A stretch of 63,878 bases of DNA, filler included, from Reticulomyxa filosa (Eukaryota > Protista > Foraminifera): NCBI GenBank assembly GCA_000512085.1. It is 22 parts of 22 records of this genome, joined end to end, with 100 filler letters (N's around TTAATTAATTAA, not from the genome) between each part and the next. Parts side by side here need not be neighbours in the genome. Positions count along the whole stretch, not along the records: positions 43,007 to 44,127 come from ASPP01028493.1; positions 44,228 to 45,441 come from ASPP01042345.1; positions 45,542 to 54,293 come from ASPP01024709.1; 19 more parts are not named here. One strand, given 5' to 3'. Numbering within the stretch: the first letter of the stretch is position 1; every line of letters begins with the position of its first letter. The position numbers were made by a program, and so were the translations under genes. The notes beneath the pieces are model-generated. The model ran no database searches and was not told the DNA's origin. It saw nothing but the letters and a program-made list of their open reading frames with translations. This document shows positions 6,449 to 54,774 of this stretch, one piece after another.

Positions 6449-9400
6449 TTATGATTTATCTGTGCTGAACCACGTTGTCCACAAACTGGTTCCTTGATTA
6501 TTTTCGTTTTTTATGCTACTAAATTTGCCGATTCCATATCCAACTAACAAACTAGCTGCAATTATAATTAAATCAGTCCGCTTTAAAACACTGGCATCAA
6601 AACTCAGAGAGACACGTGTGCCTTGTCGATTATAGGAAAGGACCCTCTCTTTGTTTTCGTTTTCTTTTTGCGGGGTACTTGTTATCGTGTAGTGATTCTG
6701 AAGATTTGTGTTAGCTTGCTGTCGAGAATATTTATTGTTTCCTTCACTATGATCAGTTGATGTAAGACCGTAGCTTGGGTTATTTCGGTTACTATTTTGA
6801 GTTAAACGCGTACAAATGAAAAAAAATAAAAAATGAACGAACGAGAAAATCCAAAATAATATAATCAAATTACCTTGTTATTGTCGGTGAATAGACTGCA
6901 TTGGGCTGATTTTGATTTGTATTGCCAGAAACATTATTGGTATTTCTTTCAAATAAATTCATATAACTGAGAGATTCAGCTTGTGACGTGATTTGTTTAT
7001 GAGCATTGTACTTTTGTTTTTTGTCATTGGCATCGGCAATGGAAGTGGCAACAATGCTATCCTTTTGGAGGACAGAATCATTCTCTTGGTTAAGATGATT
7101 CTCCTCTCCAGAAGAAGGTTTACGATAGCCCAAAATTCCAGGCTCTCTTTCGTTTGTAATGTCACGACTCGACAAAGCCCGAGACAGGGTCAGCGTCGGA
7201 CGTTTGGGAAGAGATGATACATCATCTGAAAGTTCTTTCTCCTTGGATTGTTTTTCAGCAATGGAACGTTTTTGATTTAGCGATTTGGGAGCTTTGGTCA
7301 TCATAACCTTATATTGCTGTGTAAATGATAATGGAAAAATTGGCGGTGGCAACCCTTTTTTTTTTTGAAAGGGGGTGCAAAGATTTGATAAAAACTTTTT
7401 TTGTTTAAAAAAAATATAAGTATACATACATGTATGTATATATGTGTACATGTATATTATAATTAAATAATCCTAATAAAAAAATATTTGTACCCAGGAT
7501 CCAATTTTCTTCTTCTCTCAATAGTTCATCACGAAATCGAAGACGAATATCAGGAACATTGGTTTGATGGATATCATTTCCGGCAGGTCCTCGCATATGA
7601 TATTTTTTCCCAATCCAATGGCGTTTGCACTCGTCCGGAAACCCGCATTGTACCACAGAGTTGCGTGCGATTTCGCACATGTCAATGGCGGACAATTTAT
7701 AGACCTGAGCGGCAATAGCATATTCTTCAATCAAAGGGTCTTTTGTATAATGGATGAGCAGCGGGTCATCCGTGGACAGCGTGACATTTAAACCGCGTTG
7801 AAAAAAGGAAGGAAAAGGATTTTTATCATACTCGATGAACAGGAGATTGTTGGACAACGGCGACATGGAAATGCCGACCTATACAATTCCAAAATGTCGT
7901 ATGCTTTGTAATGTTGGATGATGACAAAAAAAAAAAAAAGGGGGGGGGGAAGAGGTGTTTTTGTTTTTTTTGGATTGAAATATGAACCTGTTTCAAATAA
8001 TATAAAAATTGTAAAACAGGCGACTTTTTCAAAGTAAGTCCATGATTGATCGCATGCGCCAAAAGGAAAGCGCTTGCGACGTGATCAACATCTCCAGCCT
8101 CGCCACTGTGCGGACGAAATGCGAAAGTGTTCATGCCTTTGGCTTCGCGCAGCTTGTTCAAGACAAAGAGATTGGCATACAAGTAATAACACCAGAATAC
8201 GTAGGGAGGATTTTCGTCCATGTTCCAATCGTTTGGTAAAGGGAGATCTTTGTACCGTGTATTTTCTTGAATGCTTTCATCATCGACACTATCAAAGCCA
8301 ACGACAAGCTTCAAGAACAGGTCCAATTCCAAATTGGCTTGCGGATCGACGGTGACTTGAAAAAGGGGATAAAAGATATGATCCAGCATTTCCCCAAAAT
8401 TGGTAATGCATTTGCTCTGTTTGTATACGTTATACAAGCGCGGGATCTGGATCATCCATCGCACATTCGGACAATGCAGTTGGTTATGACACACCCAGTT
8501 TGCCAATGTGGTCCATTCGTGACGCGCCTTTCCGTATATGCTTAGTCGATACTCGGCATATTGGTATTTGCTTTCTTTCAAATCGTCAAACACCTCTTTC
8601 GTCACCCCCGCCAGAAAGCGCCCGTTCATCGAGTTTTCTACTTTCAAAAACACCTGACGCAACATCGGCTCGCCAATGGGATTGTACTTTGCGTTGAAGC
8701 GGTCGAACCGATGGAACGTCTGTCTGTGTCCGTGCATATTCAACAAGTCGATGCTCAGGTCGTACGCCGTCAAGTTCAGGCGCTCGAACAGCTGTGCCAA
8801 ACTTACATCTTTCCCGTCACTGTCTTTCATCACGACTAAATCTCCATTGTGTTTTAAGCGCGACTTTATAAATCGTAGCAAATGTTTTTGTCTTTTTTTT
8901 TTTTTTAATTAAACAACATTACAAATTTTTGCCAACGGTACTTTGAATTTAAAAAAAAAAAAAACCAAATATATTTCATTCGTACATAACGTCATACAAG
9001 CCTATTGAAACACAAACACATGAGAAGATTGCTCGTTTCAATATGTTACACATCTCCCTCCCCCCCTCTCTCTCCCTCTTTGATACAAAATGCATTTGTA
9101 CCGAGTGATGGACGTGGGTATCGACTTTGCGGACATTATAAAAGTCTCGATGCGGCACTGACTTCACCTCTCGCATTTCATTTTCTTCGTTCAATAGCAT
9201 GTGCAAGCGATACTTCGCTTCCAACATTTGCAATCGCGAATAGCAAAAAGTTTTTGCAGGTCCCATCCTAACCCATAAATATTTTTTTTAATTTAAAAAA
9301 AAAAAGGGGGGGTATGTGGGGCTCATGTTCATGAATTTTCCTAAAAAAAAAAAAAGAAACATGATCAAAGCCATTAAAATGTCCAAATCTCGAAAAAACT

Positions 9401-43700: not shown

Positions 43701-45720
43701 AGATTAATAAAAATTGCTTTCCAACTGGTTCCAGCTTTCGTTGATCCATTTTTGTTCTACAGTCAATGCTTTTTGCACTTGTTCACAAAAATTGTAAAAA
43801 TCATAAAAAATAATCATATTTTTTTTTCAAATTATCTTTATTTTTCTCAATAAGATCTGTTTTTTTTTTTGTAATCAAGTGCGTATATTTGTATAATGAG
43901 ATTGTATGCATTGAATTTTTTGTAGGTCGTTTAAATTATTTTCAAAACTCTTGAATAACAAATGTCTCAAGACAAATTATTACATTGAGTTAAATAAAAC
44001 TTTCTTCGAGCGTACTTAAAAAAAAAACACAACAGATCCCATTGAATAAAATTTTTTCGAACTTCTTTTTGATAAAGCATTTAAAGTTTGACATAACCAA
44101 AATTGTGGACCGTGTAAAGTGAAGTTANNNNNNNNNNNNNNNNNNNNNNNNNNNNNNNNNNNNNNNNNNNNTTAATTAATTAANNNNNNNNNNNNNNNNN
44201 NNNNNNNNNNNNNNNNNNNNNNNNNNNATATTCACATAAAATTGAAGTAAGATGTATGCAAAAAACATTGCCAATAAGTTATATCGTTTTTATACGTCAT
44301 TTGGTGCAAAAAGATTGGAGAAAGAGTTGATTTTACAATTGATCATGTTAAACAAAACAATATGGTGAATTCAATGAAAAAACTACCAACACACGTGACG
44401 ATAAGCAGATCAAAAGAATGGAGATTTTTGCCATATTTAATAGTAAAAAAAAGGTGAGTTGGATAAAAGATGCATTACAAAGACTGTACTAAACAACATG
44501 AGATTGCTATAATCACTGTACGAAAGGTATTGAAAAATTTGCAAAGATTTGTGGCGTAGATGCACCAATTTCTGTATTTGAATATCATGTTCTTGCACGC
44601 TTCGTAGAGGAATGCAACAGAGAAAAGACTGCTTATTTTCTTATTGGAATGGCAGCACAGTTATTTCGATTTCTCCAAATTTCAAACAAAAACAAAGTCA
44701 AGAAATTGTGTGTTGTGCATCATATGTAATTTTGATATTTTAATGACATTGGCATAGCAAACGAATGCAAAGGCTTTGTCAATATCTCGTCATTGCATTA
44801 CATGACCAGACAACGACGCAATCTCCACGATATGCATTACAAACTTAATCGTATGAAAAATAAAGCATTTTTCCATGCCCGGCAGCTACGGGACACTTGT
44901 TCTTCTTTTGTTGAAATTTACTGTGGTTCTGCTTTTTCCATTTTTTGTTTTTTGATTGAAGATTATTTTTGTTTTTATCTGTTAGCCTTTTTATTTGAGC
45001 AGGCTGAGATTAGTTTGAAAAAAGTTTTGAAATAACCAATTTTTTTTGTGCGTTTAGATATTGTGGATGTATATAAAACAAATTGCGACAAATTACATTT
45101 TCCAACTCGGCATTCTACAAATCATTTGCCACAAACTTTTTCTTAAAGTGGCTTTATTGCTCATTTGATACTTTCTGTTCGGCGTGTCCAGTAGGAGCGG
45201 AGGGGGCAAACTGAGCAAAAAATATTGAGTGGAGACTTTTAGTTGTTGGCAGCAGCGTGAAATCCACCTTGACGTTGGGATTCCACATTTATTAAATGTG
45301 TTCACGGTGGTGCAGTACAAAAAATGAAAATGAGCAATTCAGCTGGGAGCGGACAAACGCTTTTGTATCATCACGACAATATAAATGCATTTACAACATC
45401 AAGGAACAACTCTATCAGCCACGTGTAGAATTTATAACATGNNNNNNNNNNNNNNNNNNNNNNNNNNNNNNNNNNNNNNNNNNNNTTAATTAATTAANNN
45501 NNNNNNNNNNNNNNNNNNNNNNNNNNNNNNNNNNNNNNNNNATGGAGAAAATCGATTCTCTTCATATAGTGCCATTTAGGTATGGCGGTTTTTTTTGCAA
45601 TCTACTGTATAATACAAAAAAGCGATAATTCGAGAAATTCAACATTTTTTTTACAAGTTAATGTCGTGCCTTCCAAACAAGGTTACAACTCCGTAAGTTT
45701 AAAAAAACGAATTTCACACT

Positions 45721-47521
45721 TGTATGAGAAGCTCCTACTATATATAAAAACGTTAAAGGGGCTGATGAGCTCCCGGTGGGTTAAACTTTTGCTAACACTT
45801 TTCACTCACTAGTGTTTTCTTTTCTCGTTTTAGTCTGGTGTTTTGGTGTACTCATTTCCACACACTTGTTTTCCTTTTCTTTATTTAATCTTTTTCGTTG
45901 ATACTTGCTCAAAAGAGCTAATTAACCTTTCGTATTATATTTAGCAATACCAAGCGAAAGACCACATGTTGGGAAATCAGACGGTAGAGGCGATAAGAAA
46001 GACTTAATGGAAAGAACAGATGACAATGTAATGAAGCTGGCAATGGATTTGTCAAATAGGTTTCGATACATGTTCAAGGGAAGTATATATGATTTCCCTA
46101 GCTGGAGAAGGCAATTTTTGTCATAGAAAGAAACTTATCAGTTACCTGACTAATTTTGTGTGAGATATTTGTTATCACAATGTTTGTCACTCGAAGTAAA
46201 GGACATGGTGGCAGCGGAACAACATCAAACATTCGAGGAATTAATAGTATTATTATATACAATGTTTGGAGGAAAACATTATGTCGTTGAGCGAACTCAT
46301 GACTTGATCCAATTTAAAACAAAAAGCGTTGAAGGACCAGCTGACATTATATTACGCTGGCACAAAACAAAGTTTGATATAAAACTAGAATTAGAATATG
46401 CATCTGAATGCAAAGTATCTGCAAGAAAGAGGTTGAAACCTTCATACGAAAGATTAATGGAAGTATTATTAGATTCATTAGGCGGATTGGTACGCAAATT
46501 AGTTTACAAGCAAAATCCGACGACCATGGAAGATACAGAAGATGCTCTAGTATTCACACAAAGTAGATTCGAAGAAAAAATACAAGTACGAAGTAAAGAT
46601 ATAACAGGCAAATAGCGAATCACCAGGAAAAAGGTCGACGAAAGGCGATTATGCAAATTTCTATAACAATCGTTTTACAGTTAACAAAAAAGGAGTTCAA
46701 AAAATATGTAAAATTATGTCATAACACTAGGTCAGCATAGTTATAAGTGCAAAGCAAAGCACAACGTTATAGCAAACCTTATTCAAAAAATAAGCGAACT
46801 TATGGCAATAGTAATAATAAACGACAATGGAATGACGAATGTTGAAATGTGGAAAATATTGGCATAAACAACGATATTGTCCTAGCGATAAAAAAGAGAT
46901 TCAAATTTTAGAATATCAAGTAGATAATAGATCAGTCGCCGAACATATATTGCCAATGTTAGTATTGTACAGAGTAATTGAAGAGCCAAATACAATCGAA
47001 ATTGAGTTACAAACAGAAGATATATGGAAAATAAAAGCAATCGCAGATACAGGTGCATCTATATGTGCAGTCAAGGGGACAATAGCGAATACATTTAGTA
47101 ATTTGGTAACAAAAGACGATATAGCATTTAATGTAGCACATGCGGGTGGTTGTATGACATTGCAAGATAAATTGAAATTAACTTTATGTGATAACAATAG
47201 TCATAATCAAAGATTTCAAGAGAATTTTTATGTAGTTGACAATATTACACATAATTTTATTCTGTTCAGAAGCATATTGCGTAAATTGGGGTATTCCTTG
47301 AAATTAGAACACGAAAGGTTCGAACATGTCCGTTCAGATGTAGTATTGGATGGCCAAGATCTGGAGTCATCAGATATTGTGGAAATGATTACACCGAAAC
47401 ACCAGACTAAAACGAGAAAAGAAAACACTAGTGATTGAAAAGAGTTAGTAAAAGTTTAATCTACCAGGAGCTCGTCAGCCCCTTTAACAATTCTATCTAT
47501 ATAGTATGAGCTTCTCCTACA
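45721..47521 (+). mobile_element. Decayed LTR retroelement: 5' LTR (45721-45966), gag, protease, then an inverted partial LTR (47378-47521); 4-bp flanking repeat CACT
   Basis: Starts TGTA and ends TACA. CACT at 45717-45720 and 47522-47525. 45721-45862 matches the reverse complement of 47378-47521 at roughly 85-90% by eye. The interior carries gag, zinc-knuckle and DTGAS protease motifs. Confidence 0.88.
46007..47377 (+). pseudogene. gag (capsid plus CCHC knuckles) and retropepsin-type aspartic protease, disrupted
   Basis: ATG 46007 is in frame with ORF 46160: FKGSIYDFPSWRRQF (gag FxG...W..F motif). Knuckle C/KCGKYWHKQRYCP at about 46840-46883. Protease IKAIADTGASICAV...FILFRSILRKLG. Several TAG/TAA stops and frameshifts. 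Confidence 0.85.
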
Positions 47522-49322
47522 CACTAAATTAAATATCTTATGTTTGTTTTCAAAATTTCAACAAAAAATTAAAATGGAATTATCATCTATCCAAAAAGGA
47601 AACAATTTGATTTTCAAATATTTTGAAAATATCTTATCCTTTTGAAATAAAGCATGAAATATGTTCTAATTGACTATTTCCACTTTTTCTATTTTTGTAC
47701 ATTTCATTTCTATTGATTTAGATTCTATTTTAAACAATCACTTTAATCTAATTTGAATATTTTCTCAACGTCGTAATGCAATAATTTGCAAAAACTGTAC
47801 AACCAAAAAAAAGATTGCTTTTTTAGTATTTGACTTGTATTTTCATTGAAAAGAGGCAAATTAAAAATAATTTTGTAGATACACAGACTATCTTTTCTCT
47901 TTGTTGTAATATCTTATCTCTTGCATTTATTTGAAATGTTATATATTAATTTTTTTTAGTTAGATTTTACATTATGCATTTTTTTTAACAAAAATGTTTG
48001 TATTAAATCTATATTAAACTGTAAAGAAAAAATAATCAATTTAACAAATGTTTAAAAGAATCTCTTATGTGTAATTTACCACTTGGTGAAATTGCCATTT
48101 GCATTTATCAAATCATGAATACGCTTAGCTATTGAAGCAATAAGCATATCACACAAATCACCTTCAATATAGTACAAGTGCTTGATAAACTCATCAAAGA
48201 GATCACCTTTGCTGGAAAATTGTCTATTTTTGTAAGTAATAAAGATATACAAGTCAAATACTAAAAAAGCAACATTTTTTTTATTGAAGTGTTTTTTGCA
48301 AACTACTGTATTAGTCTGTATATAATATATCAATATGATTTAAACAATAAATGTTATTTTCATTATATTTTCTTTGTTCAATTTTCTTCAATGGCTATGT
48401 ATATTATAATGTATCTTTTAGTTTTTCTGTAAATAGTTTGACTGTATTTTATAATATTCATTTAATTCGAACTAATTGTCGACTGTATTTTTTGTTTCGT
48501 TTTTTCATTTTACTTCTGTTTGATGTTTAATTTCTTTATTAATGATTTAATATTTTTATACATAAAATATACTTTGTATTGTTGTTTCAATGTTTCAATT
48601 AAATACTTTATCATTTTATTTTGAACTATATCAATATGATTTAAAACAATCACATGAACAAATACAATACTAAACGATTTCTTTTGCTTTGTCAAATAAG
48701 CTTTTTCCGATGTGATATAGTGAAAATGTACAACTTAATGATTATTTATTCTATAAAGCGTTTTTACCTTGTACAATCATTGATCAATTCTGCTTTATAT
48801 ATTGTATTTTTTTATTTAGATTTATTCCTTTAACGACGACTTGCTTCTTCTGGTCGATATAATCTAATTGGATGATTGACATTTCACTAAATGTTACACT
48901 AATTGTTGAATGGAAATACAAGTTTAATGAATGAAATAAAAGTAAGTAATTATAAAACTATAGTTACGTAAAAAAAAATTCGTAAAATGAGAAAAGTCCC
49001 CTTTTCAATACACTCCTAAAAACTCGTCGGGCTGCATTTCGACGTTTATGCGAAAAAAGTATATGTTGCATATTTGTATTTTTTTAGACATTTTTTTCAA
49101 GTACAAAACATCTCTGATGAAAATCGCTGGAATGATCTAAGCCAAAACAAAAGAAGTAAACTGAAAATGCAACGCGTAAGCGAAATAAATCATTGAAAAC
49201 AAATTGAAATACTTTGTTGAAAGTAGTGTGAATGAGCTAATAATTGTCTGGTTTTGTGACAATAAGAAAATCCACACATTACAAGAGAGACATTTGTTTC
49301 AACGTTGATAAAGTTATTTTGT

Positions 49323-49968
49323 TTACAAATCTTTATCTTCAGCTTTGTGATTCAAAATATCCAGAAGTTCCACATCAAAGACTAAAGTGGCACCTCCTGG
49401 GATTTTGTCTCCTGCACCTCTGTCACCATAACCAAGGCCCGAAGGGATTGTTAGTCTTCTTTTCTCACCAATACACATATTCGTCAATCCTTGATCCCAT
49501 CCCTTTTTTTTTTACCAGATGATGTTTATTTGTTATAAAGTAAACATGAGTACTTTCTCAACTTTGATCACTTGTCCTTTTCCTAATGTGAATGTAAATG
49601 GTTGATTTCTGTCCAAACTTGAATCAAATTTACTTCCGTCACGTTTTAACGTACCAGTGTAATGCATAGACAATTTATCACCAGTACGGGTTCGAATCGG
49701 ACAGTTCTCAGGTTTGTACTTCACTGTTAAAAACATCAGAAGAAAAATGGTTCAGAACCAGGCATTTAATTTGTTGAGAACACATATTGAAAGCTAATTC
49801 CGCCTTTAACCTCCAATTCGCAGCTTCGCGTCTGCTGGCAAGTCCTAAATTTATCGAAGTTAAGATTACTATTGCATTGATTTTCTTTCAATAAAAATTA
49901 ACTTCTCCTGCAAACGTTGTGACCAAGAGCACCACAAAAGCCAATAAAATCAACTTCAGCTTCATCAT
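49323..49968 (-). CDS. FKBP2: ER-type FK506-binding peptidyl-prolyl isomerase (FKBP2/FKBP13-like), 4 exons
   Basis: Signal peptide [20 protein letters not shown]; [82 protein letters not shown]; ends EDKDL-TAA. Confidence 0.93.
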
Positions 49969-50239
49969 TATATCTAAATTAAATTTCAATATGTCTGACC
50001 CTTGAAAATAAACGCTGAACAACTGCCCCGCTTGTAGAATCCAATAAAGTGAAGAAGTTATTAAGTGTTATATGGGAAAAAGAATCAAGTTTACGATAAG
50101 ATAAAACAACGATGAAAACACAAGGTGTTTTAATTTATTGAAAAATATCATAGTTAATGCACAAAAATTTGACAGCGAAAACCATAATTTGAACAAAATC
50201 TGGCCATTTATAGAGCAAAATTAAAGGACATGAAGTATA

Positions 50240-51549
50240 TTACAACTTGGCTTTGTTGTTTTGTTCAAAAGATTTTGGAATTTGGATCAATTTATGATGG
50301 ATTAAACTGTTCGTTGCATCCAACAACATATCACGAGCGTTGATATACACAACGCTTAAATCTTTAATAGCAGGAGAGGAGTCAGAAAGTCGAAGTTTTC
50401 CATACTGTGGCAAGACAAAGTCGGTGACCAATGGATCAAAGAAGGAAGCAAGCCATATCACCCAATAAGGACCAGTAGTTTGACTGACCGAAAATCCTTT
50501 TGGTCCATATTCATAATTCAAATACTATCATGGGTTGTGATAGAAAAGGCAATGCAAGAACAAAACAAACAAACAAATGAGTAAATATGATGCTTGTATA
50601 TGCGTTTACAAACAAATAAGCATATAACAAACCATTGCAACATCACTTGTCCACATGGTGGCATTGACGATAATATAGCGATTGCCATTAGCCGCTTTGG
50701 AAGTCAATGCATTCACATGACCTGTAGCAACATCACGAACATCACAAAGCTTCCAGTTAATCTTGGGAAGTAAAGGATATATTCGGTCCATAATTGATGC
50801 TATCACCATCATGCTGGTTGGTAATCGAGGGTTCAGTAAAGGTCCTACTGTCATTGCCGGTGCAATAGTTACGAATTCAAACGGGTTGTTGTGTTTTTTT
50901 ACAAAATCCCATGCAAATTTTTCAGCCAATGTCTTCGACTTCATATAACCAGAAGGCTTTTTTTTTTTTATTTATTGATAAGACCCCCTTTTTTTTTTTT
51001 ATACAACCACTTACATGTTTTACACATCCTCCTTTTTTTCAATTAGTTAACGAAATAGTCAGGTTTGTCCAATGGCGTCCAGTCTTTTGATGTCAAAAAA
51101 GTCACTTCTTGGCGTTCTTTTGGTAAGTTTTTGCCTTCTACATCCATAGCCGCTACACTTGTTGTGTATACCACTCTTTTTATGGTGTTGCGATTCGCCA
51201 AACAAACGTTCAGAATTCTTTCCATTCCCTTCATCACGGGTTCAGTGTAATCTTTTTCGGTCAGATTTTTCTCTCCTTTCGCTGGTGGCATTACATTTGC
51301 CGTGTGAATGACATAGTCACAACCTTGAATTGCATTATCCCAGTTTTTATCACTTGACAAGTCACATTCAAATAATTCAATTGGACGGGTATTTTTGTCT
51401 GTTGACAGATCATATATGTATTGATGATCTTTGGAAATTTTACGCACTGTTCCTCGCACTCTGTAGCCTTTAATACACAGCTGTTGGACCACATGTCCAG
51501 CAATAAAACCAGAGGCACCAGTAACTAAAACCAATGGAGGATTATTCAT
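50240..51549 (-). CDS. NAD(P)-dependent extended SDR (dihydroflavonol reductase / aldehyde reductase-like), 3 exons
   Basis: VLVTGASGFIAGHVV, GYRVRGTVR, VIHTA, TTSVAA, YMKSKTLAEKFAWDF (YxxxK), CDVRDVATGH. Confidence 0.92.
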
Positions 51550-51791
51550 TTCAAAGTTGACGAGATGTTATCTGTACCAGAAATTTATTTAAGTTTCCGA
51601 CCGGTGCCAGTTCTTGCACTGAATTAAACATAAATTTATTTCACATTCATTTTTTAGATAGTAGTGATGTTAACAAAGTGTTTGTGTTTCTTAGATTACT
51701 GTTCATTCATGTAATAAATTTTATATAAGGTGCAGATCTTAATTTGGGTGTATTCGTATAAATATTAGTTAAAAAAAATTATACAAAAGTT

Positions 51792-52115
51792 TGTAGGAAC
51801 AGTGGGTGTGACTAAACGTAACACGAAAGGAACTATATTTCAAAAAATAGAGTTTCAGTAAAACGAAATCAATTAATAAGAAAACGACAAAAGTATAGTA
51901 AGAGTGAGTGGAAGCACCAAGTGTAATAAGGAAGTAATTAAAAGAGTTTTCGAAAAGAAAAATAAAAGTAGTTAATAATAAATAGATAAACAACTAACAG
52001 ATAAAGAAATAAGAAAACAGAAAAGTAAAGAAGAAGATAGTGAGTGTTGTTGAGGAAAAAGGGTTCAATCGTTCATATGGAACTTCTACTCTAATTAGTA
52101 TGGCGTTTCACTACA
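51792..52115 (-). mobile_element. Probable solo LTR (about 324 bp) related to the 45721 element
   Basis: On the minus strand it begins TGTAGTGAAACGCCATACTAATTAGAGTAGAA (compare TGTAGGAGAAGCTCATACTATATAGATAGAA), carries CCTTTCGTGTTA about 27 nt before its terminal CCTACA. No exact TSD. Confidence 0.6.
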
Positions 52116-52504
52116 AAAGATCTTTTATTTGTTTACTTGCTTGCGTCGAAGCAGGCGCTGAATACAAATGGACATTCGATCATTATTACTGATTTTGTAA
52201 ATTTTTTTATTGAAATTATAGTCAGTTTACACAAATTAAAGTGATATCACTAACGCATGCTTACAAAGATGCTTGCACGTTAGAAAATGTAATTAACATT
52301 AATCCAAATGGCGAAATAAATTGAAAACGCAGTAATTGAACAAGAGAATACACCAAATGAATTAGATATTCGAAAATAATATAAAAGCAAATAATTATAT
52401 TTATTTACAAAACTAAATAAACAATTAAAACATTTAAACATATAAAAATGCTGAAAAAGATATAAACACATAACATTGGAAAAAAGTCAAATCAGACAAT
52501 ATAG

Positions 52505-52721
52505 TGTGGGATTTTGAGAAGATTAAGTGTAATACGAAAGGAACTTAGTTCCAAGAGAGTAATTTCAGTAAAAGAAAGTTAATTAAAGAGAATAATTCCA
52601 ACGCAAGTAAAACAATTAAAACAAGAGGAAAGTTATTATTGCTAAGAGTATTGTTTTAACCCACTGGTGGTCCCAACGTTCCGTTAGTATTTAAGGATGT
52701 AATGTAGTGACTTTCCCTACA
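52505..52721 (-). mobile_element. Solo LTR (217 bp) with 4-bp TSD ATAG, related to the 45721 element
   Basis: TGT...ACA ends. ATAG at 52501-52504 and 52722-52725. Shares CC(A/G)GTGGGTTAAA and CCTTTCGTATTA...CCACA with LTR 45721-45966. Confidence 0.8.
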
Positions 52722-53364
52722 ATAGAATGAAATTTAAAGTCATATTTGTCAAATCTAAAAAAATATAAAATGCAAAGTTTGATGTTACAAATGAAGTTTT
52801 TAAGCTTTTCAGGCAAATTTAAGAAAAACATTAATTTAAATAGTTGTGCATGTACATTAACTGTTATTGTTATTTAATAACTTGGGTTTATTTTTTCAAT
52901 TATGAATAACTATTTGAAAGGTTATGCAACATAGATAAATAGATTATGTCATCCTGAAGAGAACATATAACTTAATACTAAAAAGTGTGATGCTGATACA
53001 ACAATGCACCTTTGTTTCTCCAATGAAATTTTGACTTTCATCGTTGTGAATTTCATATTATTCATTTGATCAATGATATAGTTTATGTGTGGTGATTTAT
53101 TGAACAGCTTATTTTTTTAATCTCTTTTCGTCTTTATGCGCTATGTTTATATTGATAGGCAAACTTGTGCGCAAGGTTAAGTCTTTGACTCCTTGCATCT
53201 CAAAAAAAAAATTATGCATAAAGCAGAGTAGGCAATTTCAAAAATATTAACCTTTCAATATAAAATGTGGACGAAATTGCATTTTCGAAAGAAAAAAAGA
53301 AATTGAAAGGAAACATTGTTTGAAGTACATTTGTGTCAGAAATACAAATTTTTTGCTTGTAGAT

Positions 53365-54262
53365 CTATTTGGAAGTGCTGGGATCAATTTCGCCCTGTTT
53401 TAGACGATGCAAATATACGTTTGGCTTTTCTTTGTCCAAAGCGTCACGGTCGTACCCTCTGCTATAATCGTAGCTAGTCGCATATGCCAAAATTCGGCCA
53501 GTATGATTGAAATCCATCGCGACAACAGGAAGCTTCATCCGTTTCAAACATAGTAGTCGAGTTCTATTCTCCCATCAATCAATTCGAAATCAAAGTATGA
53601 TTTTGTCTTCCCTCTCCCTTTCTCCTTGCACTAAAAATCAAAATAATGCACTCACCGGCTTTGTATAGCCCAGGTAGATACTTCGCCATCAGATCCTCCA
53701 CTCGCCAACGTCCCGAATTGTTGATTAAAGCGAAGCGTGTTGACACTGTAAATATCGGACTCACTTTTGTAAGAATAGGTAGTATGCGATGACTTGGATT
53801 CGTGTCGATGGCATTTGAAGGAAAAGCCACGTTTATCCTGTACGTCTTTATTGATATAACGAATTTGAATGCGACCTTCAACGGAGCCCACAGCAAAGCC
53901 ATCTTCGTTCGGGATGCAATCAAGGCCTCGTAATTGAGTCTGGAATGCACTCATGCAATCGGTCATACTTTGATTGACATTGCGAAGATCATACCAACGG
54001 AAATGTTTGTTGTCCAATGTACACACTAACAATGTATTCTTGTGACTCAAGTTGAAAATTTTTTTTTTTATGTTGTCAATCGTGAGACTCCTTTGAGAGC
54101 TTCGCAAATCCCAAAACACGATGCTTGTATCCCAACTCCCAGTCACGACCCAACTTTGCTCTTTCACATAGCACATGTCACTCACCGGCGCTCGGTGCCA
54201 GTTTCCTAATGCTTGAAATGATTGCTTTTGCAGGTTCCATAAACGAACAGTGCAATCACAGC
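53365..54262 (-). CDS. RAE1: mRNA export factor Rae1/Gle2 (Bub3/Rae1 WD40 family), 3' part
   Basis: VVTGSWDTSIVFWDLRS, GFAVGSVEGRI, FSFKCHR, DIYSVN, GTLASGGSDG, FNHTGRILAYATSYDYSRG (Rae1 YDWSKG). Confidence 0.88.
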
Positions 54263-54774
54263 CTTTTTTTTTTTTTTTTTAAATAAAAAAATTNNNNNNN
54301 NNNNNNNNNNNNNNNNNNNNNNNNNNNNNNNNNNNNNTTAATTAATTAANNNNNNNNNNNNNNNNNNNNNNNNNNNNNNNNNNNNNNNNNNNNATATATA
54401 TATATATATATATATGTGTTGTAACATTTATGGCATATTGAATTTATGCGAGGACACATCCTTTATGTTTGTTTCTATTGAATGCAGTCGACAATACATT
54501 GAAGATAAAGGATTTTTAATCAATGTGGAGATTGATTGGCACATTAAAAATTTTAAATTTTAGTTTTGAAAGTCCCAAATTTTTTTTTTTTTTTTTTATT
54601 TTTTTTTTTTTTAAAGAACATTTTGAAGTATTTACTGAAAAGTGTGTGTTGATTCCTCAGAGCATCCTGGAGCCTCTCCCCATTTTGTATCGCATAATAG
54701 ACAAACTCTTTGGCAGGCATATGCTTCATTATTTGGATCTTCCAAAGAGACAATAGTTTGACAGCACGACCATT

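What the first reader, a model, noticed from the sequence alone, without database searches (positions are those of the whole stretch)
45717..47525. Gag-protease retroelement with inverted LTR ends and an intact target-site duplication
Seen: the element starts TGTA at 45721 and ends TACA at 47521. The first ~142 bp are repeated in inverted orientation at the right end (~85-90% identical). CACT flanks both ends. The interior is gag, CCHC knuckles and a DTGAS protease, with no RT or integrase, and the protease frame runs straight into the inverted repeat. Known: LTR retrotransposons have direct LTRs; TGT...ACA TIRs with 4-bp TSDs typify Ginger DNA transposons, which lack gag/protease; DIRS1 has inverted ends but no TSD and no protease. 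Inference: this is either a mobile TIR-bounded gag-PR cassette (an LTR-to-TIR hybrid moved in trans by integrase) or a fossil integration that used two left (U3) ends. Comparison with the nearby solo LTRs suggests the left repeat is the start of a full 246-bp LTR.
Basis: partly seen in the sequence, partly recalled or inferred. Interest (0 to 1): 0.85.

Follow-up and report, generated by a model that had tools for sequence, protein, structure and literature searches.

The report
Dead retrotransposon with two left ends
A decayed 1.8-kb fragment of a Ty3/gypsy-type retrotransposon in the foraminifer Reticulomyxa filosa carries the same LTR end at both tips in inverted orientation. An intact 4-bp target duplication flanks it, so it is most likely a rare fossil of an integrase joining two "left" ends of a faulty DNA copy, not a new kind of mobile element.

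Summary
Positions 45721-45862 and 47378-47521 are inverted copies (128/142 identical, K2P 0.106). The element runs TGTA...TACA and CACT flanks both ends. The interior is a decayed gag (three in-frame stops), a wrecked nucleocapsid region with one CCHC knuckle broken by a 1-nt deletion, and an open DTGAS protease frame.

The piece is Reticulomyxa filosa contig ASPP01024709.1. Relatives on other contigs of that assembly are Ty3/gypsy-type (gag-PR-RT-RNaseH-IN). Three of them stay homologous up to 47379 and then continue into a linker and RT. This copy is therefore cut at the PR/RT linker and capped by an inverted LTR.

Best reading (about 0.6): one integrase event inserted an aberrant cDNA with an LTR 5' (U3) terminus at both ends. 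The insert was dead on arrival. An MLV provirus of this type was reported in 1988.

I found no second copy with the joint, so a mobile TIR-bounded family has no support.

Two things stay open. No reads were available, so the joint is unverified. The LTR is either 142 bp (the arm is the whole LTR and the inner joint is an exact LTR terminus) or 246 bp. Interest is modest.

The parts
45717..45720 (.). Left copy of the 4-bp target-site duplication, CACT
   Evidence: Read directly. Identical to 47522-47525. The chance of two equal 4-mers is 0.75%.
45721..45862 (+). Left arm: LTR from its first base (TGTATGAG...) to ...TTTCCACA. TATA-like box at 45739-45750. This is either the whole 142-bp LTR or the first 142 nt of a longer one.
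   Evidence: Inverted match to 47378-47521. TATA box. ACA ends at only 4 of 246 positions, and the arm ends on one of them.
45863..45966 (+). Positions 45938-45966 already align with gag-coding sequence of relatives (..AIPSERPH..).
   Evidence: L008 9690-10015 matches window 45944-46269 at 73%. In-frame conservation of SERP(H/Y)V in L005, L008 and the window. No similarity to the right arm.
45938..46615 (+). Decayed gag (capsid-like core). The first ATG is at 46007. In-frame stops at 46124 (TAG where relatives have W), 46151 (TAA where relatives have K) and 46613. It lacks the roughly 150-codon N-terminal coiled-coil region present in relatives L001, L005 and L008.
   Evidence: tblastn of P0004 and P0005 gives 61-64% identity. 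Stop positions. Missing N-terminal region. No Pfam hit.
46616..46880 (+). Wrecked nucleocapsid region with stops in all three frames. One CCHC knuckle at about 46834-46880 is split by a 1-nt deletion.
   Evidence: Three-frame translation. L001 has the intact knuckle CWKCGKHGHKQRDC at the homologous place.
46881..47377 (+). Aspartic protease domain, still open (ORF 46839-47438). The active-site motif DTGAS is at 47046-47060. It ends in the conserved ...DGQDLES.SDI at the start of the PR/RT linker.
   Evidence: Pfam RVP E 0.003. 35 homologues, the distant ones in PR-RT-RNaseH-IN polyproteins. Alignment A2.
47378..47379 (.). The joint. Internal homology to relatives ends at 47379 and LTR homology starts at 47378, an overlap of TG.
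   Evidence: blastn end points for L001, L002 and L004 are all 47379. Arm alignment. Local comparison.
47378..47521 (-). Right arm: the inverted copy of LTR nt 1-142 (144 nt because of a 2-nt insertion). Its outer tip is the LTR's first base.
47522..47525 (.). Right copy of the target-site duplication, CACT

Best explanation
This is a single, old, dead insertion of a Ty3/gypsy-type LTR retrotransposon of Reticulomyxa filosa. It entered the chromosome as an aberrant DNA copy.

The copy consisted of LTR, gag and protease, and stopped in the PR/RT linker. There it was joined to an inverted LTR, so that the LTR's first base (the U3 end, TGTA...) stood at both tips. The element's integrase treated the two identical tips as a normal pair. 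It inserted the molecule in one concerted step with the usual 4-bp staggered cut, which gave CACT on both sides.

The insert lacked RT, RNase H, IN, a polypurine tract and a direct 3' LTR. It could never be copied again and has decayed: about 10% divergence between the arms, stops and frameshifts in gag and NC.

Shown: the anatomy, the truncation point, the exact tips, the duplication and the decay.

Inferred: how the two-U3 molecule arose. My preferred route is an error late in reverse transcription. A plus-strand DNA whose 5' end is U3 nt 1 (set by polypurine-tract priming) ran off or stalled at nt 142. That position is the U5 terminus if the LTR is 142 bp. The strand then paired by 2 nt (CA/TG) with the 3' end of another plus-sense DNA stopped in the PR/RT linker, and the two primed on each other.

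Two equally compatible routes exist. One is end-joining of a broken cDNA to a free double-stranded LTR. The other is integration of a partial inverted dimer followed by solo-LTR formation on its complete half.
For: - Both tips are exact LTR starts in inverted orientation, and the 4-bp flanks are identical. The chance match is 0.4-0.75%. Only one concerted integration gives the same duplication at two like ends.
- The element belongs to a PR-RT-RNaseH-IN family. L002 of the same assembly has gag-PR followed by RT_RNaseH_2, Integrase_H2C2 and rve. Distant hits are full gypsy polyproteins.
- L001, L002 and L004 are homologous up to 47379, and L001 and L002 read on into the linker; L001 reaches the start of RT and L002 carries RT-RNaseH-IN. 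The protein alignment shows ...DGQDLES..DIG.N... continuing where the window switches to LTR-encoded residues.
- The inner edge of the arm is ...CCACA. ACA ends at only 4 of 246 positions, which suggests a defined DNA end rather than a random break.
- The decay fits one old event. Arm K2P is 0.106, and there are three nonsense changes in gag plus a ruined NC region.
- The right flank is not the reverse complement of the left flank, and no RT/IN remnant follows the right arm. Fold-back replication and a nested solo LTR are therefore excluded.
- Precedent: Colicelli and Goff 1988, J Virol 62:633, 'integration utilizing two U3 sequences'. I saw the title; the content is from memory. Rearranged proviruses from faulty strand transfers are common in HIV-1 (PMC9278108).
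Against: - The joint rests on one contig of one fragmented short-read assembly (N50 3.6 kb). No sequencing run could be listed, so no read support was obtained.
- The family's normal LTR arrangement, LTR length, target preference and duplication length could not be shown. Every related contig breaks before an LTR.
- No primer-binding site or tRNA match could be established.
- The way the two-U3 molecule formed is inference only.
Confidence: 0.6

Rival explanations
1. Two independent insertions of the same LTR family lie in opposite orientation at adjacent or identical sites. A later deletion removed everything between the protease of the first and the LTR of the second. The CACT match is coincidence or reflects a target preference.
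For: The region is rich in transposon debris: a Tc1-like end at 45542-45608 and a MITE at 47774-48311. Internally deleted relatives exist, for example L008, where gag is joined to RNase H/IN. The 10% arm divergence could reflect two different source copies.
Against: It needs a 0.4-0.75% coincidence of the 4-bp flanks. It also needs a deletion that ends exactly at an ...ACA position of the inverted LTR. No remnant of the second element's interior or of the first element's RT/IN/3' LTR remains. No tRNA gene or other obvious site-specific target lies nearby.
Confidence: 0.13
2. Assembly artefact: a chimeric read or mis-join fused a truncated element from one locus to an inverted LTR and its flank from another locus.
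For: There is a single source, a highly fragmented 2014 draft assembly (50,809 scaffolds, N50 3,609 bp). The joint has only 2 nt of overlap. No read data could be examined.
Against: The same CACT at both outer ends would again be coincidence. The assembler breaks contigs at repeats rather than bridging them: the related contigs I could align stop before any recognisable LTR or at a Tc1-like end. The two arms differ at 14 positions, so each is anchored as unique sequence.
Confidence: 0.1
3. A non-autonomous mobile family: a gag-PR cassette bounded by 142-bp TIRs derived from LTR ends. A gypsy or Ginger-like integrase supplied in trans would move it as DNA. This would be a possible intermediate between LTR retrotransposons and Ginger DNA transposons.
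For: Formally it has Ginger-like features: TIRs within the 40-270 bp range, TGTNR-type tips and a 4-bp duplication (PMC2836005).
Against: The joint-spanning protein is a singleton, and no homologue carries the LTR-encoded tail. Every relative recovered continues past the joint into the linker, and L001, L002 and L004 carry RT-related sequence beyond it. The copy encodes no integrase and is decayed. Retroviral-type integrases are not known to excise integrated DNA (my knowledge). The target CACT is unlike the Ginger1 (CCGG/CCGT) or Ginger2 (RTATAY) targets. LTR words gave no hit in metagenome contigs.
Confidence: 0.05

Closest known systems
Moloney MLV provirus with LTRs in inverted orientation, integrated through two U3 ends (Colicelli and Goff 1988, J Virol 62:633-636)
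   Same: A retroelement DNA with the U3 terminus at both ends, LTR sequences inverted relative to each other, inserted by integrase with the normal short target duplication. It is defective as a result.
   Different: That case came from a laboratory virus in mouse cells. This one is a natural, ancient, decayed insertion of a Ty3/gypsy-type element in a foraminifer, with only gag-PR retained. I saw only the paper's title; its content is from memory because the paper was not held.
Ty3/gypsy (Metaviridae) LTR retrotransposons
   Same: gag with a CCHC knuckle, a D(T/S)G protease, TG...CA tips and a 4-bp duplication. Relatives in the same genome have PR-RT-RNaseH-IN with gypsy-type Pfam domains.
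   Different: This copy has no RT/RNaseH/IN, no polypurine tract and no direct 3' LTR. Its second LTR is inverted.
Ginger1/Ginger2 DNA transposons (PMC2836005)
   Same: TIRs of 40-270 bp, TGTNR tips and 4-bp duplications.
   Different: Ginger elements encode an integrase-like transposase, lack gag and protease, are multi-copy, and target CCGG/CCGT or RTATAY. This element has gag-PR, no transposase, one known copy and the target CACT.
DIRS1-type retroelements
   Same: A retroelement with inverted terminal repeats.
   Different: DIRS elements use a tyrosine recombinase, make no target duplication and lack a protease (my knowledge). Here there is a duplication and a protease, and relatives carry a DDE integrase.
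Rearranged or defective HIV-1 proviruses (asymmetric LTRs, inversions) from aberrant strand transfers (PMC9278108)
   Same: Integrated products of faulty reverse transcription with deleted or rearranged LTR regions.
   Different: As far as I read that paper, the asymmetric-LTR proviruses it describes keep both LTRs in direct order; none is described with two U3 ends.

Membership tests
Ty3/gypsy LTR retrotransposon | Polyprotein order PR-RT-RNaseH-IN with gypsy-type RT_RNaseH and Integrase_H2C2/rve domains | tested here: met
   Met in relatives, not in this copy. L002 carries RT_RNaseH_2, RT_RNaseH, Integrase_H2C2 and rve after gag-PR. L009 has RVT_1 and then IN. Distant PR homologues P0026, P0027 and P0036 are full polyproteins. 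The window copy stops after PR.
Ty3/gypsy LTR retrotransposon | gag with CCHC zinc knuckle and a D(T/S)G aspartic protease | tested here: met
   gag is 61-64% identical to relatives. There is one knuckle, frameshifted. DTGAS is at 47046-47060, with Pfam RVP E 0.003, below the cut-off.
Ty3/gypsy LTR retrotransposon | Two LTRs in direct orientation | tested here: not met
   The only second copy of the LTR sequence is inverted. No direct repeat of it exists in the piece.
Ty3/gypsy LTR retrotransposon | TG...CA tips and a 4-6 bp target-site duplication | tested here: met
   TGTA...TACA and CACT/CACT.
Ty3/gypsy LTR retrotransposon | Primer-binding site after the 5' LTR and a polypurine tract before the 3' LTR | tested here: inconclusive
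   A TGG-containing stretch follows 45966, but it lies in sequence that is gag-coding in relatives. No tRNA gene was available for comparison. No polypurine tract adjoins the right arm.
U3-U3 integrant (aberrant retroelement integration) | The same LTR terminus (U3 end) at both tips, in inverted orientation | tested here: met
   Arms 45721-45862 and 47378-47521 are 90% identical, and both end on LTR nt 1.
U3-U3 integrant (aberrant retroelement integration) | A normal-length target duplication flanking the two like ends | tested here: met
   CACT on both sides, with a chance of 0.4-0.75%. The family's normal duplication length could not be measured.
U3-U3 integrant (aberrant retroelement integration) | The structure is real in genomic DNA | not testable with these tools
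   No sequencing run was listed. Only one contig carries it.
Ginger DNA transposons | Encodes an integrase-like DDE transposase | tested here: not met
   There is no IN similarity inside the element or elsewhere in the piece. The ORFs are gag and PR only.
Ginger DNA transposons | TIRs of 40-270 bp with TGTNR tips, 4-bp duplication, and target CCGG/CCGT (Ginger1) or RTATAY (Ginger2) | tested here: inconclusive
   TIR length and duplication length fit. The tips are TGTAT and TGTAG. The target CACT does not fit either preference.
Ginger DNA transposons | Multiple copies sharing the same TIRs | tested here: not met
   No second copy turned up in the protein searches or in the eight related loci. 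The whole assembly could not be searched as DNA.
DIRS-type retroelements | Tyrosine recombinase, no target duplication, no protease | tested here: not met
   A duplication and a protease are present. Relatives carry a DDE integrase.

The most novel reading that the evidence does not exclude
The structure is not a one-off. It would be the founder or a member of a DNA-mobile, TIR-bounded family made from LTR ends, moved in trans by a gypsy-type integrase. That would be a living example of the step by which an LTR retrotransposon lineage could give rise to Ginger-like cut-and-paste transposons.
Probability: 0.05. Interest if true: 0.8.

Novelty: new member of a known kind. Interest (0 to 1): 0.33.

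Why it matters
If the joint is real, this is a natural fossil showing that a gypsy-type integrase can pair and insert two identical U3 ends in vivo. To my knowledge this has been documented only for a laboratory MLV provirus. It bears on how strict end recognition is in this integrase family. It also shows that molecules with the end structure of Ginger-type DNA transposons do arise from LTR elements. In addition, it records an apparently undescribed Ty3/gypsy family in a foraminifer: two literature searches listed no paper whose title or abstract is about R. filosa retroelements. As a single dead copy it has no evident effect on the host.

Tried and rejected
- Reads: the look-up of sequencing runs listed no run, so read laying was not used and the joint has no read support.
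- Exact LTR words in metagenome contigs gave 0 hits twice.
- A gag word search found only the window's own protein.
- I tried to reach a 3' LTR of relatives through an integrase query and two look-ups. Both contigs end inside IN, so the normal LTR orientation and length of the family could not be shown.
- No LTR-like DNA of this subfamily occurs in L001-L006, L008 or L009.
- PBS and tRNA: no tRNA genes in the piece or in eight loci.
- The Colicelli-Goff and Glockner papers are not held.
- I first took 45542-45610, which matches L002 3795-3863, for an inverted integrase fragment and considered a larger inversion. I rejected this. The same 5'-CAGTAG... terminus abuts TA with different flanks in the window, in L006 and in L002, and it also forms the ends of the small MITE at 47774-48311. 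It is a Tc1-like TIR end that sits at contig edges.
- Fold-back replication after integration is rejected because the right flank is not the reverse complement of the left flank.
- A nested inverted solo LTR is rejected. The 4 nt before the arm (ATAT) differ from those after it (CACT), and no RT sequence follows.
- Classical autointegration gives circles, not a chromosomal insert (my knowledge).


Full report
**Source**
The piece 45542-54293 is the whole of contig ASPP01024709.1 (8,752 bp) of the Reticulomyxa filosa draft genome GCA_000512085.1. R. filosa is a foraminiferan protist. The assembly is highly fragmented: 50,809 scaffolds with N50 3,609 bp (PMC13746701). The rest of the piece carries ordinary host genes on the minus strand: FKBP, an NAD-dependent epimerase/SDR and a WD40 protein. 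The host is a protist, so the limits on animal and crop proviruses do not strictly apply.

**The observation**
- The inverted repeat is real. Positions 45721-45862 match the reverse complement of 47378-47521 with 128 of 142 aligned bases identical. There are 8 transitions, 6 transversions and one 2-nt indel, and K2P is 0.106.
- The element begins TGTA at 45721 and ends TACA at 47521. CACT stands at 45717-45720 and at 47522-47525.
- Two random 4-mers from the host part of the piece are equal in 0.75% of draws, and CACT has frequency 0.4%.
- The gag frame has stops at 46124, 46151 and 46613. At the first two, relatives have W and K.
- The region 46616-46838 has stops in all frames.
- One CCHC knuckle (about 46834-46880) is split by a 1-nt deletion relative to the intact knuckle in L001.
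- The protease ORF (46839-47438, DTGAS at 47046-47060) is open and runs 60 nt into the inverted arm.

**What family it is**
- Pfam gives only a sub-threshold RVP hit (E 0.003) and nothing for gag.
- An exhaustive HMMER search with the protease ORF found 35 relatives.
- The seven close relatives whose contigs I looked up (P0002, P0004, P0005, P0006, P0008, P0012 and the window's own P0001) all lie on R. filosa contigs.
- L002 carries gag-PR followed by a gene with RT_RNaseH_2, RT_RNaseH, Integrase_H2C2 and rve. L009 has RVT_1 and then integrase.
- Distant hits P0026, P0027 and P0036 are full PR-RT-RNaseH-IN polyproteins.
- The family is therefore Ty3/gypsy-type. Two literature searches listed no paper whose title or abstract is about R. 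filosa retroelements.

**The truncation**
- Nucleotide homology of L001 (78%), L002 (73%) and L004 (65%) to the window ends at 47379 in all three.
- Relatives share ...FEHV.SD..LDGQDLES.. and then a linker (L001 and L002: DIG.N...). In L001 the linker leads into the start of RT (FDIGQIPNAEMKIELKSGTKPIK...). The window switches after SDI to residues encoded by the inverted LTR.
- LTR homology begins at 47378, so the two homologies overlap by TG.
- Nothing resembling RT, RNase H or IN lies to the right.
- On the left, the copy also lacks the roughly 150-codon coiled-coil N-terminal part of gag that L001, L005 and L008 carry upstream of the conserved ..ILSERP(H/Y)V.. motif.

**How long is the LTR?**
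- Against 246 bp:
  - The arm ends in ...CCACA. ACA ends at only 4 of the 246 positions, so a random break would land there 1.6% of the time.
  - Positions 45938-45966 are homologous, in frame, to gag-coding sequence of L005 and L008.
- For 246 bp:
  - The stretch also ends in ACA.
  - A TGG follows 3 nt later.
  - Contigs L003 and L004 both start within about 10 nt of that point, as if a repeat boundary lay there.

I lean towards a 142-bp LTR, which would make the right arm a complete inverted LTR and the inner joint an exact U5 terminus. The point is open.

**Mechanism**
The same 4-bp duplication on two like ends is the signature of one concerted integrase event. I therefore read the insert as an aberrant cDNA with a U3 terminus at each end (the "Excluded and less likely" section below gives the chromosomal routes I tried). 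Retroelement plus strands start at U3 nt 1 because they are primed at the polypurine tract (established knowledge).
- Preferred route (inferred). A short plus strand ended at nt 142. That would be a run-off at the end of U5 if the primer was already gone, or a stall. It paired through CA/TG with the 3' end of another plus-sense strand stopped in the PR/RT linker. Mutual extension gave a duplex with U3 nt 1 at both 5' ends.
- Second route. A broken cDNA was end-joined to a free double-stranded LTR.
- Third route. A partial inverted dimer was integrated, and its complete half later collapsed to a solo LTR.

In every route the integrase used two U3 ends.
- A precedent exists for MLV: Colicelli and Goff 1988. 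I saw the title. The paper was not held, so its content is from memory.
- Faulty strand transfers that yield integrated, rearranged proviruses are well documented for HIV-1 (PMC9278108).

**Excluded and less likely**
- Fold-back replication after integration would copy the left flank in reverse. The right flank is unrelated.
- A nested inverted solo LTR would be flanked by its own duplication and followed by RT. The flanks are ATAT versus CACT, and no RT follows.
- Two opposite insertions plus a deletion need the 4-bp coincidence and a deletion that ends exactly on an LTR-type ACA.
- A chimeric contig needs the same coincidence. The assembler visibly breaks at repeats rather than bridging them. 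Without reads I cannot exclude it.
- A mobile TIR-bounded family has no support:
  - The joint-spanning protein is a singleton on one contig.
  - No homologue has its LTR-encoded tail.
  - The copy is decayed.
  - It cannot retrotranspose, because it has no PPT, no direct 3' R/U5 and no RT or IN.
  - Its Ginger-like traits (TIR length, TGTNR tips, 4-bp duplication) are what any U3-U3 integrant would show.

**Verdict**
The "mobile hybrid" reading stands at about 0.05. This is a rare but known kind of aberrant retroelement insertion, seen here in a natural protist element. Interest is modest, and read-level confirmation of the joint is still needed.

Noticed in passing
window 45542-45608 (contig edge); also L006 1-36, L002 3797-3876, L004 2311-2327, L008 about 9011-9043: A high-copy Tc1/mariner-like terminal inverted repeat end (5'-CAGTAGATTGCAAAAAAAAC...) abuts TA with different flanks. 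It sits at the edges of several contigs and is inserted into the gag (L006) or integrase (L002) of gypsy copies. It probably causes many assembly breaks.
   Followed up: partly
window 47774-48311: A small MITE-like element of about 540 bp with 68-nt terminal inverted repeats (84% overall, the inner 36 nt at 94%). Its tips resemble the Tc1-like end above. It is flanked by TA on the right and TG on the left.
   Followed up: partly
L001 1-420, L008 9242-9690, L005 1-170: Relatives carry a roughly 150-codon coiled-coil-like N-terminal extension of gag (..DEASLKQQL..LQEQIKLLS..) that has no Pfam match and is absent from the window copy. In L001 it is joined directly to the nucleocapsid region, with the gag core missing.
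   Followed up: partly
L008 10013-10015: An internally deleted gypsy copy: gag (equivalent to L002 nt 137) is joined directly to the RNase H/IN region (L002 nt 2675). Large internal deletions are therefore common in this family.
   Followed up: no
window 49323-50022, 50606-51549, 53365-54185 (all minus strand): Intron-containing host genes: an FKBP-type peptidyl-prolyl isomerase, an NAD-dependent epimerase/SDR-family protein and a WD40-repeat protein. The retroelement lies about 1.8 kb beyond the nearest of them (the FKBP gene), in AT-rich, repeat-rich sequence.
   Followed up: no
window 45855-45893 versus 45798-45836: The stretch just after the left arm weakly resembles an internal part of the arm (about 31 of 37 aligned bases, T-rich). 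This could be a degenerate partial duplication or a chance match.
   Followed up: no
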